Positions 3,300 through 64,000 of a DNA stretch of 64,000 bases are shown here, one piece after another. Where the stretch lies: positions 1 to 64,000 of IMG/VR virus record IMGVR_UViG_3300043436_004687. One strand, given 5' to 3'. The first letter of the stretch is position 1, and each line of letters opens with the position of its first letter. Below the pieces are notes generated by a model that did no database searches, was not told the origin of the DNA, and saw nothing but the letters and a program-made list of their open reading frames with translations. Both the position numbers and the translations under genes were made by a program.

Positions 3300-4268
3300 T
3301 TATTTATTAATTTCTTTTTTAATTATTTCACTAAAATCATCATTTAATATTTCATTAATTTCATTAAGATCTATTTTTAAACATTCAGTATAACCATTAA
3401 AAATGGTTAAAGGAATATACTTATTATTTATAAATTTATTTAAGTAATATCTTTCCAAATAAATAGAATTATATAATGATGTTTTATATTCCAATAATAT
3501 TTTCACATTATATGGAAATTGTTTCCCAGAAAACCTATATTTAGTTTCTTCTTTTTTAGTAATACCTATTTTATAAAATAATTCATTATTATTACTACAT
3601 TCCACTAAATAAAATTTTGCATTTATTTTATTCCATAATAACTTATTTCTTTTGGCTAAAGTTATTGTATAACCACCAGTTAAATTTTCAAATGAACATT
3701 TAGGACACCCATTACTTTGTAAATGAAATCTTGGGGATATAGAGAATTCCCCATGTTTTTTACATGTAATATTTATTTTGCTATACCAATCAACAAAAGA
3801 ATCTGAATTATAAACATAAAGATTATTAAATTTCTTATTGGCTTTTAAACAAAAACTTTTAAAATCATTTTTATAATTTCTATTAATAACACTACATTTT
3901 TTACAACCTTGACCATTTATATGATTACGTACATTTTGATTGAAATCACCATGAATTTTACAAGTAATTATAACTTTATCAATCATTTTTTTATACTTAA
4001 ATTTATCATAAGTATAAAAGTTATTATGGATTTTATTAAAAATTTTTATAAAATATTCTTCTTTATTAATTGCTGACCCAATTCCTATTTTCGTATTATT
4101 TAACAATAGATTTGGTCTAACTTTACATAAACCAAATTTATTTTTAACTATTATTTTAATATTACTTTTTACATAATTACTTTCCACAGTAAATAATTTA
4201 TTTTTATAATCACCATTTTTTATTAATAACAATTTAATAAATTCCGAATGCGTAAGTTTTTTATTCAT
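3300..4268 (-). CDS. Putative free-standing homing endonuclease (DUF723-like CxxHG..CxxC repeats, C-terminal GIY-YIG/T5orf172-like domain)
   Basis: Repeats CKIHGDF..GCKKC and CKKHGEF..GCPKC; C-terminal FYLVEC..YKIGITK..RF; directly downstream of thyA. Confidence 0.7.
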   Translation of the reverse strand: MNKKLTHSEFIKLLLIKNGDYKNKLFTVESNYVKSNIKIIVKNKFGLCKVRPNLLLNNTKIGIGSAINKEEYFIKIFNKIHNNFYTYDKFKYKKMIDKVIITCKIHGDFNQNVRNHINGQGCKKCSVINRNYKNDFKSFCLKANKKFNNLYVYNSDSFVDWYSKINITCKKHGEFSISPRFHLQSNGCPKCSFENLTGGYTITLAKRNKLLWNKINAKFYLVECSNNNELFYKIGITKKEETKYRFSGKQFPYNVKILLEYKTSLYNSIYLERYYLNKFINNKYIPLTIFNGYTECLKIDLNEINEILNDDFSEIIKKEINK

Positions 4269-58338: not shown

Positions 58339-59122
58339 TAATTTCTATTAAAGGGTTATACAAATTTTCTAAAGCTATTACTAATTTTTGTAAGTCTCCC
58401 TTATAAAATCCACTACAATTAATACAATTTATTTCAACCATTTTCCAACCATCTGGTGTTAAGCAAATATCCATCACAAAACATTCAGCTACTTGGTATA
58501 AGTCAACCATTTTTTGAGCAAATTCTAAACCCTCTGGTTCAACATTTTCTTCATAAGCAACATATTGGCCAAATCTATAATATGAACTAGTGACTATCTT
58601 ACCACCAACAATCCAAATTCTAGCTTCCTTATATATTGTTTTAGGTTTACCAATTTGAATTAACTGAGGTTCTACTAATTTAGTATAATTAACATTTAAT
58701 TTACGTTGTTCAATTAAATCATCCCATTTAGTTTTGGTAAATAATTGACCATTAAATAACTTAGAATCTTTACAAGGTCTTATGAATTTAGTTTCATTGT
58801 AATCCCATTCTATAGGGTCAAGAAATTCTTTAATCTCACTATCATAATTTAAAAGATTTTCTTTATAAAATTTAGAATAAATTGAATAATCATGATTCCC
58901 ACCAAAGAATGAACCAGGATACCAATCTTTTTCAGCAGCTAATTTTGCCATTCTAATTGAACCGAATGTGAATACATCTTTACGTTTAGTTTTTACTTGA
59001 AAATCATCGGAATTAGGTAAACAAGTGATAACCTCAAACTCCAAATTTAATTTAGTTAAAGTGTCAAATATAAGATTATAATTTACTTCCCTGAAAACAT
59101 TTTCTTGGATTACGTAGTACAT
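58322..59122 (-). CDS. ATP-grasp domain protein (DUF4343/R2K-like)
   Basis: FIRPCKDSKLFNG, EARIWIV, FVMDI..WKMVEIN..SGFY. Confidence 0.75.
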   Translation of the reverse strand: MYYVIQENVFREVNYNLIFDTLTKLNLEFEVITCLPNSDDFQVKTKRKDVFTFGSIRMAKLAAEKDWYPGSFFGGNHDYSIYSKFYKENLLNYDSEIKEFLDPIEWDYNETKFIRPCKDSKLFNGQLFTKTKWDDLIEQRKLNVNYTKLVEPQLIQIGKPKTIYKEARIWIVGGKIVTSSYYRFGQYVAYEENVEPEGLEFAQKMVDLYQVAECFVMDICLTPDGWKMVEINCINCSGFYKGDLQKLVIALENLYNPLIEINEKRF

Positions 59123-59685
59123 ACTTTATAAGTTGAGTTTGTTTTTTTAATTTTATTTATTTCTTCAGTTTCATCTAAAATATATTCCTCAAATTCATTA
59201 TGATTTAGTAAAAGTTTTTCATTTTCTTCCAACTCAAACATTTTTATTAAATTTTCATAATGGCGTGAATTATCTATAGGTTCGACCAAATCTAAATGAA
59301 TTTTAATACTTCCAGTAAACAAATCATCCAGTTGTTGACGAAGTTGCTTATCAGCCTCTATCTTATAGAGTTTAACTGCTTCTTGATACTCATCCTTATG
59401 TTTTTGATAATTCTCTTTTATTTTTGAAATTATATTTTCTTTGCTAATTGTAGTTTTCATAATTAATCATTTATTTAGTGCAAAGATAGTAATTAAAAAT
59501 TAATTGAACAAATTTATTTTTCTAAAAGTTCAATTATTTTTTTCTTGAAGTCTAAAATAACTTCATTGGCACTTTCCTCATCAAAAGTCGAAGTTATTAA
59601 TGAAATTAATTCTGAATCATCAAATATAAACTGTAGTTCTAGTAATTTTTTTTCTAATGTCATTTTAAATTAATTTATTTATTTG

Positions 59686-59757
59686 TACTCCCGAAGGGAA
59701 TCGAACCCTCCTTCCCAGGCTGAAAACCTGATGTCCTAACCGATAGACGACAGGAGC
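59686..59757 (-). tRNA. tRNA-Glu(TTC)
   Basis: GCTCCTG/CGGGAGT; TCAGG-TTTTCAG-CCTGG; T-loop TTCGATT. Confidence 0.95.
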
Positions 59758-59766
59758 ATAAAAATT

Positions 59767-59880
59767 AATCAAAAAGTCTTCGTCTCTCCTAGCTGGCCCA
59801 CTTGAGGATAAATCCTCGTGCCCGACTCGAACGGGAATGCTAGCGACTCAATCCAGCTTGCCATTTTCATGGTTTTGATT
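59767..59880 (-). ncRNA. GC-rich structured RNA with a T-loop, between tRNA-Asp and tRNA-Glu
   Basis: AATCAAAA/TTTTTGATT closure, AGCTGG/CCAGCT, CCCG-TTCGAGT-CGGG, GAGGA-TTTA-TCCTC. Confidence 0.6.
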
Positions 59881-59886
59881 AATTTA

Positions 59887-59961
59887 TGGCGGTCCTAGAG
59901 GGAATCGAACCCTCATCATGCCCGTGACAGGGGCGTATCCTAGCCATTGAACGATAGGACC
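59887..59961 (-). tRNA. tRNA-Asp(GTC), CCA encoded
   Basis: GGTCCTA/TAGGACC+G+CCA; GCCC-CTGTCAC-GGGC. Confidence 0.96.
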
Positions 59962-59963
59962 TT

Positions 59964-60797
59964 TTATTTTAACCATTTTCTTATAGCATTATCACTAACA
60001 CCATATTTCCTACCAGTTGCAGAATAACCTAATTGATCAACTTCTTTTAATAAAATCTCTTTACTAGGTCTATCTTTAACTTTTCTTAATTTAGTTGAAC
60101 TTTCGATTTGTTTATTAGTCCTCGCATTATTAATTAATTTTTCAGAATTTAATAATATTTTATCTTCATTTAATTTTTCAATCTTAACATATTTTATTTT
60201 TAATCTATTATGACCAATACAATGAGTTTTTGTTTGACTATGACAATTTGGGCATAAATATCTTAAATTTTCCAACCTATTATCACTATTATCACCATTA
60301 ATATGATCAATTTCTAATTTAATTTTATTTCCACACCAAATATCTATTATGCTACAATTTATATTACTACATTTATAAGATAATAATTTATCTTGAATAA
60401 TTCTTTTCTTTACTACATTTTTACTAACACTAGAATTTAAAATAAATATTTCATTATTAGTTAATATTCTACTGTATTTATTACCTCTATTATATTTATA
60501 TTTTAATATTGAAACATCAATTCCATATAACAAACAATATTTATCTAATGTTTGAAAATTCCCAGATTTTAATGTTATATTTAAATTTCTTAATACATCC
60601 GATTTACATTCTGATTTAGATATTGCATTAAGTAAATTTTCTTTAGTCCAATTATGTGTTCTTTTATAACCACTAGTATTTAAACCAAATTTTGTTAAAT
60701 TATATCTTATTTTACCCTCACTAACCTCAAAAAAGTTACTTAATTTTTTAATTGTATAACCCTCTTTAATTTTTTCTTTTAAAATTTCTATATCCAT
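59964..60797 (-). CDS. HNH homing endonuclease within a tRNA operon
   Basis: LEIDHINGDNSDNRLENLRYLCPNCHSQT; HTH-like ends. Confidence 0.9.
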   Translation of the reverse strand: MDIEILKEKIKEGYTIKKLSNFFEVSEGKIRYNLTKFGLNTSGYKRTHNWTKENLLNAISKSECKSDVLRNLNITLKSGNFQTLDKYCLLYGIDVSILKYKYNRGNKYSRILTNNEIFILNSSVSKNVVKKRIIQDKLLSYKCSNINCSIIDIWCGNKIKLEIDHINGDNSDNRLENLRYLCPNCHSQTKTHCIGHNRLKIKYVKIEKLNEDKILLNSEKLINNARTNKQIESSTKLRKVKDRPSKEILLKEVDQLGYSATGRKYGVSDNAIRKWLK

Positions 60798-60889
60798 ATC
60801 TTTTATTATAAATATAGAAACTTTAAAAAAAGTAAACTAAGTAAAGATAATAATTTAAATAACCCTATTATTACATAATTTACACTAAG

Positions 60890-60962
60890 TGAGTTCTATG
60901 GTATTCGAAACTATTCCCAATGCTCTTCAGGCATTTGTGCGCACCAGCTACACCAAAAACTC
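60890..60962 (-). tRNA. tRNA-Phe(GAA)
   Basis: GAGTTTT/AGAACTC; AATGC-CTGAAGA-GCATT. Confidence 0.9.
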
Positions 60963-60968
60963 TTTTTG

Positions 60969-61042
60969 TGGAGGATAACAAGATTCGAACTGTTGACCCC
61001 TTGCGTGCAAGGCAAGTGCTCTACCAACTAAGCTAATCCCCC
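60969..61042 (-). tRNA. tRNA-Ala(TGC)
   Basis: G3-U70 identity pair; CTTGC-CTTGCAC-GCAAG. Confidence 0.95.
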
Positions 61043-61051
61043 ATTTTATTC

Positions 61052-61088
61052 AAAAAAAAAAACTCAACCTAATTAAAAGTTGAGTTTT
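61052..61088 (-). terminator. Attenuator terminator B
   Basis: AAAACTCAACTT/AGGTTGAGTTTT stem plus long U-run. Confidence 0.88.
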
Positions 61089-61110
61089 ATAATTTATAAA
61101 TGTTTTACAT

Positions 61111-61200
61111 TTAACTAAATTCCATACTCAACTTACCAAAGCCATAATCTTCAGCTATTGCTTCAAAAGCAAAATCAAATATGTTATTAAGTGTTTTCAT
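61111..61200 (-). CDS. Leader peptide B, MKTLNNIFDFAFEAIAEDYGFGKLSMEFS
   Basis: 29 codons; F/D/A/E are 11 of codons 8-21; antiterminator AAGTTGAGT at 61126-61134. Confidence 0.8.
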   Translation of the reverse strand: MKTLNNIFDFAFEAIAEDYGFGKLSMEFS

Positions 61201-61309
61201 AGTTTTTATTGTTATTAATATATAGTGCAAATATAAGATAAAGTTTTATAATATGCAAGTTTTTTTTAATTTATTTTTTAAATTATTTTATAACTAATTG
61301 ATAACCAAG

Positions 61310-61525
61310 TTACTTTTTACGCATTTTAGCTTGAAAAGTTTCCAATTTTTTAATCATTTGACCATCTGTTTTATCAAATACTGACCAAATTCCAGAGACC
61401 ATTGCCATAAGGGCACCACTAAGAGTTAAAAATGTTGCGGAATCTAAAACACCATAAGTTGTTAAAAATACACCAAGTGCTGTAAGCACATATCTAATTA
61501 TCGATAAAATTTGTTCTTTGTTCAT
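61310..61525 (-). CDS. Putative holin (two TM helices, basic C-terminus)
   Basis: EQILSIIRYVLTALGVFL..SGIWSVFDK, resembling Pam3-gp28-type holins. Confidence 0.6.
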   Translation of the reverse strand: MNKEQILSIIRYVLTALGVFLTTYGVLDSATFLTLSGALMAMVSGIWSVFDKTDGQMIKKLETFQAKMRKK

Positions 61526-61578
61526 ATTTAAATAGTTTATTAATAAATATATTTAAAAAATTAAAAAATTATTTTATT

Positions 61579-61650
61579 TGGTAGTGAAGGTGGGATTCGA
61601 ACCCACAAACTCCCTGTTTCTAAGACAGAATACTCTACCGCTTCTTAAAT
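61579..61650 (-). pseudogene. 3' part of a tRNA (TAG anticodon, short variable loop, CCA) whose 5' acceptor strand lies at 63081-63087
   Basis: GCGGTAGAGT, TCTGT-CTTAGAA-ACAGG, GTGGG-TTCGAAT-CCCAC, CTTCACT-A-CCA; complementary GGTGAAG only beyond the tnpB element. Confidence 0.7.
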
Positions 61651-61751
61651 AATATACATTTCTGTACATAACTCAATTCCTAATTCAACAAATAAACTAA
61701 TGTTCATTCTCCAAAGGCTTATATTCCCCATTGCGGATGGGTATATTATTT

Positions 61752-62894
61752 TTATTTTAATCCTAATAACCTAATTCCTTCATTCTTTATATTGATAGCT
61801 GCATTCAAATCCCTATTAATACTCAAATTACATTCACTACAATTATATAACCTATGTTTCAATTCTAAATCTATTTTTTTATTCCCACAACAACTACATA
61901 ATTTACTACTAGCAAACCATCTATCAATATCAACTAAATCCCTACCATACCATTCAGATTTATATTTAAGTATATTCTTAAATCTATTTAAACTCAATTC
62001 TTGTATAGATTTAGCTAATTTATGATTCTTCATCATACCACTTACATTTAAATTTTCAATTACTATAACTTGGTTATCATTTAGTAATTTATTTGCTACT
62101 TCATGTAAATAATTTTCTTTTTTATTAGTTAATTTTTCATTAAATTTAGCTAATTTTATTCTAGCTTTTTCTTTATTTTTACTACCATTTTCTTTTTTAC
62201 TTAAATTCTTATGTAATTTAGCTAACTTGTTTTTGTTATTTCTAATTATTTTTAAGTTATCATATTCTACACCATTTGAATCAACTATAAATGTTTTTAT
62301 TCCTAAATCAATTCCTACTATATTATTTTTAGGCGTATCTAATTCTAATAATTCATTTGAATCAACTAATATACTTAAAAAATATTTGTTTGATTTAGTT
62401 TTAGATAGTGTAGCTGATTTAATTCCTTCTTTATATTTGTTAAGATAATTAACATACTTATCTGACGTTCTAAATTTAATATCTTTTAATTGACTTGTAA
62501 GTGTTAACTTATTTGATAAATAATTATTTTTCTTAGATATTGCTTCTAATGGAAATCTACAACTTTGTATATTATCATGTTTTGATTTAAAATTAGGAAA
62601 CCCACTTCCATTTATAAAAAATCGTTTATAGCTATCTAACAAATTAATTACAGATTGTTTCAATACTTTGGTATTATGATTAGTTAACCAAATATAATCT
62701 GAATTTTTAGTTAGAGTTTGATGAAAATAGTTACCCAATTCTTTCAACCCCAAATTGCTTTTATCTTTTAAATAAGATTCTTTTTTAAGGGATAAGCAAT
62801 TATTAAATACGAATCGATAGCTACCAAACAAATCATTTAAATATGATTGTTGTGTAGTATTAGGGTATATACGTATTTTAATTGATTTTAACAT
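61752..62894 (-). mobile_element. tnpB: Solo IS200/IS605-family TnpB (HTH, RuvC, Zn finger) with downstream omegaRNA-like region
   Basis: KIRIYPN, GIDLGIK, VIENLNV, CSCCG..CSEC, RDLNAAINI. Confidence 0.95.
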
Positions 62895-63095
62895 AAAATT
62901 TTATGGGTATATTAATACCCTGTTATTATAAATATAAGAATAAATTTAAAAAGTTCAATATTATTATGTTAAATTTAGTTAAAATTATACATTATGGTTT
63001 TAAATCTATTTAATTGTTTATGTTTGTATAAGATTGTTTAGATAATTAGTTTCTGTTACTAACCCTTCGTTTTAATAGCACTTCACCATATTTTG

Positions 63096-63179
63096 TAACC
63101 CTGACAAGATTCGAACTTGCAACCCATTGAGGGACAGCATTCTAAGTGCTGCGTGTATAGCCATTTCCACCACAGAGCC
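63096..63179 (-). tRNA. tRNA-Leu(TAG)
   Basis: CAGCA-CTTAGAA-TGCTG; long variable arm; GCAAG-TTCGAAT-CTTGT. Confidence 0.92.
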
Positions 63180-63185
63180 TTCCTT

Positions 63186-63485
63186 TTATTTTAACTTAAT
63201 AAAATCTTCTTTTTCAATTGCTTTAGTAATCCATCTTATGAGTTCACTTCCTTTAATTTCACTATGAAACTCAGTTAAACCCAAATCCTCACTTAAAACA
63301 AGTGTATTGAAAGTTTCGGTTTGAAATGAATTGGAAACTTTTTTATGTTCAACTGTTGATATAGGAAATTGGAATGTTCCGTTAGATAAATCTATATTAT
63401 AAAATAACTTTCCATTATAATAATGAGAAAATTTAGCTAATGTTTTTAATTTGTATAATTCTTTTTTTATTTCTGTTGCATTCAT
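63186..63485 (-). CDS. Hypothetical protein inside the tRNA operon
   Basis: 99-aa ORF from the track, A-rich start. Confidence 0.65.
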   Translation of the reverse strand: MNATEIKKELYKLKTLAKFSHYYNGKLFYNIDLSNGTFQFPISTVEHKKVSNSFQTETFNTLVLSEDLGLTEFHSEIKGSELIRWITKAIEKEDFIKLK

Positions 63486-63515
63486 TTTTTTTTATGTATT
63501 TAATTTATTAATTAG

Positions 63516-63601
63516 AACTGGAAGTAGGATTCGAACCTACGGTGCACTTTTCAGTAATTAGGGTTGCAATCTAATGAATTCGACCACTTTTCTATTCCAG
63601 C
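63516..63601 (-). tRNA. tRNA-Cys(GCA) with an unusually long variable arm
   Basis: GCTGGAA/TTCCAGT, U73, loop TTGCAAC, 16-nt variable region, GTAGG-TTCGAAT-CCTAC. Confidence 0.85.
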
Positions 63602-63611
63602 ATTTGTTTAA

Positions 63612-63648
63612 AATAAAAAATCCGATTAAGTTTTAATTAATCGGATTT
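63612..63648 (-). terminator. Attenuator terminator C
   Basis: AAATCCGATTAA/TTAATCGGATTT stem plus U-run. Confidence 0.85.
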
Positions 63649-63670
63649 AAAATTGTTTTATAATTATTTC

Positions 63671-63775
63671 TTAATGAAAATAATTTATTTCAAATTCCGA
63701 TTCTTCCAACCCTAATAGGATCAGTGAAGTTAAACATAAGTTAAGCGCCAATTTGAATTTATTTACTACTTTCAT
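63671..63775 (-). CDS. Leader peptide C, MKVVNKFKLALNLCLTSLILLGLEESEFEINYFH
   Basis: 34 codons; 8 Leu (five different codons) and 1 Cys in codons 9-23; antiterminator AATCGGA at 63696-63702. Confidence 0.75.
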   Translation of the reverse strand: MKVVNKFKLALNLCLTSLILLGLEESEFEINYFH

Positions 63776-64000
63776 ATTTTTAATATTAGTTCTTTATTAA
63801 TATATAGTTTATTTTTCAAAAAAATAAATATTATTTATTAATTTTATTTAAAATTTGTATTGAATTTGATATTGTTGCTTCATTGGTGCTGTTTTCTAAC
63901 AACCAATTAACATAATTTATTAAATCAAATTTATTTATCTCATCAATTTTTTTATAATTATATTTACCACTAATGACATAAAATGTGTTGTTAGCCTTTC

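What the first reader, a model, noticed from the sequence alone, without database searches (positions are those of the whole stretch)
61579..63087. tRNA gene split by a 1.4-kb solo TnpB element
The 3' three-quarters of a tRNA (to CCA at 61579) lacks its 5' acceptor strand locally. The complementary GGTGAAG lies at 63081-63087, 9 nt after tRNA-Leu, where a tandem tRNA would start. Between them are tnpB and its omegaRNA-like end, so the TnpB guide would be the tRNA remainder, targeting intact alleles in co-infecting phages. Whether the halves are rejoined is unknown; I saw no group I core.
Basis: partly seen in the sequence, partly recalled or inferred. Interest (0 to 1): 0.65.

Follow-up and report, generated by a model that had tools for sequence, protein, structure and literature searches.

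The report
TnpB transposon splitting a phage tRNA gene
A 1.4-kb IS607-type mobile element carrying only the RNA-guided nuclease TnpB sits in the D loop of a leucine-type tRNA gene of a 340-kb lake-water jumbo phage; its guide RNA is predicted to read the rest of that tRNA gene, which is an ordinary way for such elements to work.

Summary
On the minus strand, tnpB (62894..61752, 380 aa) has an intact RuvC triad and zinc finger. It is followed by a conserved, covarying omegaRNA scaffold.

Independent insertions of relatives define the family ends as NGGG | T...CGG | T. This is the IS607 signature (G-rich TAM, GG core, scaffold ending CGG). One relative carries an IS607 serine recombinase, and so does this phage, at 87.6 kb.

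The element is therefore 63062..61638 (1,425 bp), with TAM AGGG at 63066..63063. The guide covers the tRNA D-stem 3' strand and anticodon arm (UAG).

GGTGAAG at 63087..63081 lies 7 nt after tRNA-Leu and is unlikely to be chance (about 4e-3). However, exact excision leaves a D loop 4-6 nt too long for a canonical tRNA. The surplus (CGAA before GG) resembles the family's right-end terminus and may be a scar.

I found no group I intron, no end-to-end pairing and no empty allele. Verdict: a new member of a known kind; the tRNA gene is most likely dead, and a canonical tRNA-Leu(UAG) sits next to it.

The parts
63095..63179 (-). Canonical class-II tRNA-Leu(UAG), the upstream neighbour. It carries the same anticodon as the split tRNA, so it is a redundant decoder.
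   Evidence: ARAGORN; Rfam tRNA 46.3 bits.
63063..63087 (-). 5' piece of the split tRNA: acceptor strand GGTGAAG (63087..63081), T8 G9 C, D-stem 5' strand TAT (63077..63075) and D-loop part TAAAA-CGAA-GGG. The CGAA(G) at 63069..63065 is surplus compared with related tRNAs.
   Evidence: It pairs 7/7 with CTTCACT. The only match to the pairing pattern in 61500..63200 is here. ARAGORN gives a cloverleaf only after 4-6 nt are removed. Related tRNAs have an 11-nt D loop.
63063..63066 (-). Transposon-adjacent motif AGGG (family consensus NGGG). Its last GG is the core dinucleotide that recurs at the right end.
   Evidence: Ten family insertions all have GGG before the left end. IS607 has TAM TGGG and a GG core (bioRxiv 10.1101/2023.11.20.567912).
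62895..63062 (-). Left end (168 nt). It starts TTAGTAACAG, holds A/C-rich subterminal repeats, a promoter-like 41-mer (62966..62926) and a hairpin GGGTAT-TAAT-ATACCC (62920..62905) just before the ATG.
   Evidence: The left-end start is conserved in relatives. The 41-mer recurs at 65018-65058. Rfam finds nothing here.
61752..62894 (-). tnpB, 380 aa, an RNA-guided endonuclease with an intact catalytic triad and zinc finger.
   Evidence: NCBIfam NF040570 292.8 bits. Alignment to ISDra2 TnpB 8EXA/8BF8, 155 bits. 7,203 homologues at E<=1e-20, the best at 65-71% identity.
61638..61751 (-). Right end, the omegaRNA scaffold downstream of the stop codon. It has hairpin 1 (61741..61727), the conserved GAATATAAGCCTTTGGAG, hairpin 2 (61709..61690), TGAATTAGGAA, hairpin 3 (61667..61654) and the terminus AAGAAGCGG.
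   Evidence: Alignment of 11 elements (A1). Hairpin 1 covaries. In hairpin 2, 7 of 8 pairs show compensatory changes. The terminus ...CGG is shared by all.
61618..61637 (-). Predicted 20-nt guide, TAGAGTATTCTGTCTTAGAA. It equals the tRNA D-loop end, D-stem 3' strand, anticodon stem and anticodon loop.
   Evidence: It is the first flank base after the conserved CGG. The rule that the guide begins after ...UCGG comes from the IS607 IStron paper. The guide length is assumed from known TnpBs.
61579..61637 (-). 3' part of the split tRNA, up to the encoded CCA: anticodon UAG at 61622..61620, T arm 61606..61590, acceptor 3' strand 61589..61583, A73 at 61582.
   Evidence: Rfam tRNA 31.4 bits. The same anticodon and T arms occur in nine short tRNA-Leu(UAG) genes in phage-like tRNA arrays.

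Best explanation
An IS607-type insertion sequence that has lost its transposase gene sits in the D loop of a short-variable-arm tRNA-Leu(UAG) gene. That gene was the second tRNA of a tandem pair in the phage's tRNA array.

Shown here: the element has a left end, tnpB and an omegaRNA-coding right end. It landed at a GG next to AGGG.

Inferred from the family mechanism:
- tnpB is transcribed in the same direction as the tRNA array.
- The 3' part of the transcript folds into the omegaRNA scaffold, and the first 16-20 flank bases (the tRNA D-stem/anticodon arm) serve as the guide.
- TnpB-omegaRNA would then cut any copy of the site that lacks the element (AGGG followed by the guide sequence). Such a copy could arise by excision, for example by the phage's own IS607 serine recombinase at 87.6 kb, or it could be carried by a co-infecting relative.
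- Repair from an occupied genome would then reinstall the element. This is restorative or true homing.

The interrupted tRNA is most likely not made. Even precise excision leaves a D loop 4-6 nt too long. The neighbouring canonical tRNA-Leu(UAG) covers the anticodon.
For: - TnpB identity and intact active site.
- Ends defined by five independent insertions of one relative plus six further relatives: NGGG | T...CGG | T.
- Joining at those ends restores a 149-aa HAD-family ORF in L013.
- These ends are the published IS607 signature: TGGG TAM, GG core, scaffold ending UCGG.
- An IS607 TnpA lies next to a 53%-identical relative's tnpB and also occurs in this genome. No Y1 TnpA is present.
- The right end is conserved and covaries.
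- The tRNA pieces: Rfam hit, the positional statistics for GGTGAAG, and a clean cloverleaf once 4-6 nt are removed.
- Related short tRNA-Leu(UAG) genes exist in phage-like arrays.
- tnpB lies on the same strand as all neighbouring tRNAs.
Against: - No empty allele was found in any collection, so the pre-insertion sequence is inferred.
- The exact joint is not a canonical tRNA.
- There are no expression data.
- By protein model the TnpB scores higher on the IS200/IS605-type HMM (334.6 bits) than on the IS607-type HMM (154 bits), and is below both curated cut-offs.
- The guide length and TAM stringency are taken from other TnpBs.
- If the original D loop ended in AAGG rather than AGGG, naive alleles might lack a good TAM.
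Confidence: 0.7

Rival explanations
1. The interrupted tRNA is still produced. The element would behave like an IStron or another intron and be removed from the transcript, or the two halves would assemble in trans as in archaeal split tRNAs.
For: Relatives of this element also sit inside protein-coding genes, in frame: the HAD gene in L013 and a DUF7487 gene in L026. IS607 IStrons that splice exactly at the transposon ends are known.
Against: - Rfam finds no group I intron or any other ribozyme in the left end, the right end or the whole 5 kb.
- The left end is only 168 nt and very AT-rich.
- The first and last 60 nt of the element pair no better than shuffled sequences (-11.7 against a mean of -13.5 kcal/mol).
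- Removal exactly at the ends would still give a tRNA with a 16-nt D loop.
- In-frame restoration in relatives is expected for any recent precise insertion.
Confidence: 0.04
2. The tRNA was never split here. GGTGAAG would be a chance match. The 3' fragment would be a relic, carried in with the element by homing co-conversion or left by a deletion, or a free-standing D-armless tRNA-like unit using GGTAGAG as its 5' strand.
For: - Rfam's above-threshold hit is the D-armless fold with a local 6/7 acceptor helix.
- The exact joint is not canonical.
- One match to the pairing pattern is about what chance gives over the whole 1.7 kb (0.7 expected).
- The 15 nt left of the element resemble the element's own right-end terminus, so part of the supposed 5' half may be element-derived.
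Against: - The 7-mer sits within the few positions allowed by both constraints: 7 nt after the previous tRNA, as in the other tandem pairs here, and directly upstream of the TAM. The probability is about 4e-3, or about 6e-4 with T8 and R9.
- T8, G9 and a D-stem strand complementary to GTA follow at the right distances.
- Deleting 4-6 nt gives a full cloverleaf with the same architecture as nine related tRNAs.
- D-armless tRNAs are not known to be used in bacteria or phages (established knowledge).
Confidence: 0.12
3. The element is a domesticated weapon or regulator rather than a selfish transposon. Under this reading the phage keeps TnpB and its tRNA-derived guide to destroy competing phages that carry the intact tRNA gene, or to bind that DNA, with no transposition involved.
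For: - The element has no transposase.
- tnpB is intact although its closest known relative is only 71% identical, which suggests long retention.
- A 41-nt promoter-like segment of the left end is nearly identical to a sequence upstream of another phage gene 2 kb away.
- The tRNA array also hosts an HNH endonuclease gene. Homing nucleases in phage tRNA clusters (T4 SegB) are known to exclude competitors' markers (established knowledge; review PMC13565253).
Against: - The ends are complete and typical of mobile relatives.
- A compatible IS607 recombinase is encoded in the same genome.
- No target-bearing phage was found.
- Cutting followed by repair from the occupied genome is the same reaction as homing, so this reading differs mainly in who benefits.
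Confidence: 0.14

Closest known systems
IS607-family TnpB/omegaRNA elements, including the Clostridium botulinum IStron (bioRxiv 10.1101/2023.11.20.567912)
   Same: - G-rich TAM (TGGG there, NGGG here).
- GG core dinucleotide at both ends.
- omegaRNA scaffold ending ...CGG, with the guide starting at the next base.
- A serine-recombinase TnpA in full-length relatives.
- Predicted cutting of the empty donor joint.
   Different: - There is no tnpA in this copy and no group I intron.
- The left end is 168 nt, against several hundred nt in the IStron.
- The TnpB protein scores better on the IS200/IS605-type model.
- The host is a jumbo phage and the target is a tRNA D loop.
ISDra2 TnpB (IS200/IS605; PDB 8EXA, 8BF8, 8H1J)
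   Same: It is the closest natural solved protein (155 bits over residues 3-378). It has the same RuvC D/E/D and zinc finger, and its omegaRNA likewise derives from the 3' end of tnpB plus the right end.
   Different: ISDra2 uses a TTGAT TAM and a Y1 (HUH) transposase with subterminal DNA hairpins. Here the TAM is NGGG, and no Y1 transposase is present in the genome.
Free-standing and intron-borne homing endonucleases in phage tRNA gene clusters (for example T4 SegB) and group I introns in bacterial tRNA genes
   Same: These are selfish nuclease genes lodged in a phage tRNA array that can cut the homologous site of a co-infecting relative and be copied in by repair. An HNH gene lies in the same array here.
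   Different: Here recognition would be by a guide RNA, not by protein. The element interrupts the tRNA in the D loop without a self-splicing intron, so the tRNA is lost rather than preserved.
Archaeal split tRNA genes (Nanoarchaeum equitans)
   Same: Two tRNA pieces are encoded apart.
   Different: Those halves carry complementary leader and trailer sequences and are joined by the splicing endonuclease. No such complementarity is present here, and the break is in the D loop, not after position 37.

Membership tests
TnpB (RNA-guided endonuclease, OMEGA) | Protein matches the TnpB family model above its curated cut-off | tested here: met
   NF040570 guided_TnpB scores 292.8 bits against a cut-off of 100.
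TnpB (RNA-guided endonuclease, OMEGA) | Intact RuvC D-E-D triad and C-terminal zinc finger | tested here: met
   GIDLG, IENL and NRDLNAA align with D191, E278 and D361 of ISDra2 TnpB (residue numbers from established knowledge). CSCCG...CSEC is present.
TnpB (RNA-guided endonuclease, OMEGA) | Conserved structured RNA at the 3' end of tnpB and the right end, followed by a variable flank (the guide) | tested here: met
   Eleven elements align up to ...CGG and diverge after it. The hairpins covary. The RNA itself was not observed.
IS607 family | GG core dinucleotide at both junctions and a G-rich target/TAM | tested here: met
   NGGG precedes the left end in 10 of 10 relatives and CGG closes the right end in 11 of 11. 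A GG/GG joint restores an ORF in L013.
IS607 family | Serine-recombinase TnpA encoded in the element | tested here: not met
   This copy has none. The relative L065 has one next to tnpB, at 188 bits against a cut-off of 110. This genome has one at 87624-88184. The copy is therefore a non-autonomous member.
IS607 family | TnpB matches the IS607-type TnpB model above its cut-off | tested here: not met
   NF038280 scores 154.3 bits against a cut-off of 350. The IS200-type model NF038281 scores 334.6 against 425.
IS200/IS605 family | AT-rich TAM and a Y1 (HUH) TnpA acting on subterminal hairpins close to the ends | tested here: not met
   The TAM is NGGG. No IS200-type TnpA is in the genome. The hairpins lie about 100-150 nt from the ends.
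IStron | Group I intron core within the element, with splice sites at the transposon ends | tested here: not met
   There is no Rfam Intron_gpI or other ribozyme hit at E<=10 in the left end, the right end or 59000-64000. The ends do not pair.
Canonical tRNA gene (after precise excision) | Cloverleaf with a 7-bp acceptor stem, a D arm with a 7-11-nt loop, an anticodon arm and a T arm | tested here: inconclusive
   The acceptor stem (7/7), anticodon arm and T arm are present. The D loop is 16 nt at the exact joint, and ARAGORN cannot use GGTGAAG. A clean cloverleaf appears only after 4-6 nt are removed.
Archaeal-type split tRNA | Complementary sequences next to the two halves that form a bulge-helix-bulge | tested here: not met
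   The duplex energy of the element's first and last 60 nt is no better than that of shuffles.

The most novel reading that the evidence does not exclude
The tRNA remainder may be more than a passive flank. The right-end GG plus the flank folds into a D-armless tRNA-like unit with an encoded CCA (Rfam 31.4 bits). Host tRNA-processing enzymes could act on it. That would either set the 3' end of the omegaRNA or sever the guide from the scaffold, a conflict like the one between intron and guide RNA in IStrons. Together with the right-end-like scar at the left junction, this could mark a lineage of IS607 elements that specialise on the GG(G)TAGA motif of tRNA D loops in jumbo phages and drive through phage populations by RNA-guided homing.
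Probability: 0.08. Interest if true: 0.6.

Novelty: new member of a known kind. Interest (0 to 1): 0.3.

Why it matters
This locus gives a clean natural example of an IS607-type TnpB/omegaRNA element in a jumbo phage. Its TAM, scaffold end and guide can be read off from comparative data, and the guide is a recognisable gene, a tRNA. That makes it a convenient system for testing whether TnpB elements spread between co-infecting phages by RNA-guided homing, as protein homing endonucleases in phage tRNA clusters do. It does not reveal a new mechanism. TnpB is already known to be common in phages, and insertion next to a G-rich TAM with the flank as guide is the textbook arrangement.

Tried and rejected
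1. An ARAGORN scan of 7,320 artificial joints was too permissive to locate the joint: 312 joints were called tRNA.
2. I searched for an uninterrupted allele in several ways, without success.
   - The 40-nt tRNA core gave nothing in viral contigs, and relatives of the 99-aa neighbour gave none there either.
   - Exact-protein look-ups of both neighbours returned only copies that already carry tnpB.
   - Homologues of the 99-aa ORF at 60% identity have syntenic tRNA arrays but no orthologue of the split tRNA.
   - The guide 18-mer gave only non-tRNA chance hits in viral and genome contigs.
3. Reads.
   - Runs from lake-water metagenomes hold the locus, and three runs hold only 21-23% of its words, which could be flanks without the element.
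No read-level evidence on empty alleles, circle junctions or RNA could therefore be obtained.
   - One local BLAST inside a script compared two fetched loci with window 59000-63700, which contains those places.
4. Intron or split-tRNA ideas failed: Rfam found nothing and the ends do not pair.
5. The sigma-70 promoter scan was uninformative in this AT-rich DNA: 21 sites against 15.3 expected.
6. I considered an IS200/IS605 (Y1) identity because of the protein model scores and the shared ATACCCAT motif near both ends. I rejected it on the TAM, the ends and the absence of a Y1 TnpA.

Full report
**Setting.** The window is the first 64 kb of a 339,635-bp virus record with direct terminal repeats, estimated 100% complete. 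Public runs that hold the locus are lake-water metagenomes. The genome is very AT-rich (26% G+C). All genes discussed here lie on the minus strand, inside a tRNA array: Cys, a 99-aa ORF, Leu(UAG), the finding, a 71-aa holin-like ORF, Ala, Phe, an HNH ORF, Asp, Glu.

**What is in the sequence.**
- ORF 62894..61752 encodes a 380-aa TnpB. It scores 292.8 bits on NCBIfam guided_TnpB (cut-off 100).
- Its closest natural solved relative is ISDra2 TnpB (155 bits). The three RuvC residues and the CxxC..CxxC zinc finger align.
- Downstream lies a tRNA 3' part ending in ACCA at 61579. It has the anticodon arm TCTGT/CTTAGAA/ACAGG (anticodon UAG), the T arm GTGGG/TTCGAAT/CCCAC and the acceptor strand CTTCACT.
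- Rfam's tRNA model scores this part 31.4 bits (gathering score 29). It does so as a D-armless fold in which GGTAGAG (61639..61633) serves as a 6/7 pseudo-acceptor strand.
- GGTGAAG lies at 63087..63081, 7 nt after tRNA-Leu(UAG) (63179..63095). The other tandem tRNA pairs of this genome are 5 and 7 nt apart.

**Where the element ends.**
- One relative (P0025, 68% identical) occurs as the same element in at least five different contexts. Identity begins at GGG|TACATC and ends at ...GAACGG|T.
- Six further relatives show the same ends: NGGG before a left end that starts with T, and ...CGG before the flank.
- In L013 the element lies between two fragments of a HAD_SAK_2 gene. Joining the flanks at GG/GG gives one continuous 149-aa HAD ORF. 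This validates the ends.
- The arrangement is the published IS607 signature: TAM TGGG, a strict GG core dinucleotide, and an omegaRNA scaffold ending ...UCGG with the guide starting at the next base (bioRxiv 10.1101/2023.11.20.567912; review PMC13565253).
- A 53%-identical relative with the same right-end terminus has an IS607 serine recombinase directly upstream of tnpB (188 bits, cut-off 110).
- This phage carries four tnpB genes and one IS607 TnpA, at 87624-88184 next to the tnpB at about 86.5 kb. It has no Y1 transposase.
- In window coordinates the element is 63062..61638 (1,425 bp), the TAM AGGG is 63066..63063, and the flank/guide starts at 61637.

**The omegaRNA.**
- The 114 nt between the stop codon and CGG align with ten relatives (A1).
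- Hairpin 1 switches between CCC..GGG and GGG..CCC in 5 of 11 sequences.
- In hairpin 2, 7 of 8 pairs show changes on both sides. Over hairpins 2 and 3 together, 84.5% of cells are paired, against 35-50% when the partner columns are slid (A2).
- Rfam has no family for this scaffold. It reports no RAGATH-18, no IS605-orfB motif and no intron.
- The scaffold is thus a conserved structured element up to the last base. The RNA itself was not observed.

**Is the tRNA really split?**
- For:
  - The 7-mer that can pair with CTTCACT occurs at 4.2e-4 per position on this strand, and only once between 61500 and 63200.
  - It must lie both a few bases after the previous tRNA and about 20-25 nt upstream of the TAM. 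That gives roughly 4e-3, or about 6e-4 when T8 and a purine at position 9 are required.
  - After GGTGAAG come T, G, C and TAT. TAT can pair with GTA just before the anticodon stem.
  - Nine short tRNA-Leu(UAG) genes with the same anticodon and T arms sit in phage-like tRNA arrays in metagenomes. They share the layout of a 7-nt acceptor strand, TGN, a 3-bp D stem, an 11-nt D loop containing GG, and a short variable loop.
- Against:
  - The exact GG/GG joint has a 16-nt D loop. The product is 81 nt to the discriminator, against 75 nt in the relatives.
  - On that joint ARAGORN cannot use GGTGAAG and returns only a poor alternative.
  - Removing any 4-6 nt just left of the GG gives a clean cloverleaf with the 7/7 acceptor stem and an 11-nt D loop, TAAAAGGTAGA.
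- The surplus bases:
  - They read CGAA followed by GGG, close to the family's right-end terminus CGAACGG. None of the other left flanks has this.
  - L019 shows the mirror image: 11 nt of its own left-end start are repeated just after its right end.
  - I infer, with modest confidence, that the surplus is a scar of an earlier or tandem copy. It could also be original, or a later insertion.
  - In any of these cases the present locus cannot yield a normal tRNA by precise excision.

**Rejoining at the RNA level.**
- No group I core or other ribozyme is detected in the left end, the right end or the whole 5 kb.
- The left end is 168 nt of AT-rich sequence.
- The two ends do not pair better than shuffled controls.
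- Relatives that interrupt ORFs in frame (L013; also L026 by inspection) are what any recent precise insertion would look like.
- I put RNA-level rejoining at about 4%.

**Mechanism.**
- Shown:
  - an intact TnpB gene;
  - a conserved scaffold ending CGG;
  - a TAM-like AGGG at the left junction;
  - a flank that is the tRNA D-stem/anticodon arm;
  - co-orientation with the tRNA array;
  - an IS607 recombinase elsewhere in the genome.
- Inferred from the established behaviour of IS605 and IS607 TnpB:
  - The transcript is processed to an omegaRNA whose guide is about 16-20 nt from 61637.
  - The ribonucleoprotein cuts AGGG plus that sequence wherever the element is absent, whether after excision or in a co-infecting relative.
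  - Recombination then restores or spreads the element.
- The guide has no other TAM-flanked match in its own genome. The only exact copy is preceded by GCGG, the self-avoiding motif.
- The guide 18-mer has no tRNA match in viral or bacterial genome collections. A host target is therefore not indicated.
- Loss of this tRNA is probably tolerated because a canonical tRNA-Leu(UAG) lies 7 nt upstream.

**What could not be done.**
- I then worked beside those places and sent none of their letters to database searches. A local script alignment did include them.

**Verdict.** This is a real feature with corrected coordinates and an ordinary mechanism: a non-autonomous IS607-type TnpB/omegaRNA element in a phage tRNA gene. 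It is a new member of a known kind. The unexplained part is the 4-6 surplus bases at the left junction.

Noticed in passing
G000 (outside the window) 86447-88199, 104166-105392, 262817-263935: The phage carries three more tnpB genes (31-40% identical to this one). One forms a complete IS607 with a serine-recombinase tnpA at 87624-88184. No Y1 transposase is present.
   Followed up: partly
window 62926-62966 and G000 65018-65058: A 41-nt promoter-like segment of the element's left end (TTGAAC ... TATATT/TATAAT) recurs with 2 mismatches on the other strand. It lies about 2 kb away, shortly upstream of an apparent ATG on the + strand. Either the phage and the element share a promoter type, or a left-end remnant drives a phage gene.
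   Followed up: partly
G000 about 104090 (right end of the tnpB at 104166-105392): This other element ends ...TTTACGG. Its flank TCTAGTTGTCTGTCTT matches our guide at 12 of 16 positions, although it is not a tRNA. By a rough estimate this is unlikely to be chance (about 2e-4). It may reflect a target preference beyond GG.
   Followed up: no
window 63515-63601 (-): tRNA-Cys(GCA) is 87 nt with a long variable arm, a class-II shape. Relatives carry 82-nt versions with a Ser-like D arm. This is unusual for a Cys anticodon and could mean a different amino-acid identity.
   Followed up: no
L031-L039 (metagenome contigs): Large phage-like tRNA arrays (10-26 tRNAs) contain 75-78-nt tRNA-Leu(UAG) genes, and also Leu(CAA) and Leu(UAA) genes, that lack the long variable arm and have a 3-bp D stem. 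L032 also has a tRNA with a CUA anticodon, and L036 a tmRNA.
   Followed up: partly
L013 2651-4493; L026 1916-4165: Relatives of the element interrupt protein-coding genes in frame: a HAD_SAK_2 gene, which is restored to 149 aa by a GG/GG joint, and apparently a DUF7487 gene.
   Followed up: partly
L019 about 2940-2960 and 4242-4252: The 11 nt after this relative's right end (TGCCGACTGTT) repeat the first 11 nt of its own left end. A second tnpB lies 1 kb downstream. The site looks like a tandem-copy or circle-junction remnant.
   Followed up: no
window 59964-60797 (-) and 61310-61525 (-): An HNH endonuclease-like ORF (277 aa, PF13392 weak) sits between tRNA-Phe and tRNA-Asp. The 71-aa ORF next to the tRNA fragment is a Phage_holin_10 family protein.
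   Followed up: no
It lies just beyond the 3' end of the 71-aa holin-like ORF (61310-61525, -) and is not part of the finding.
   Followed up: no
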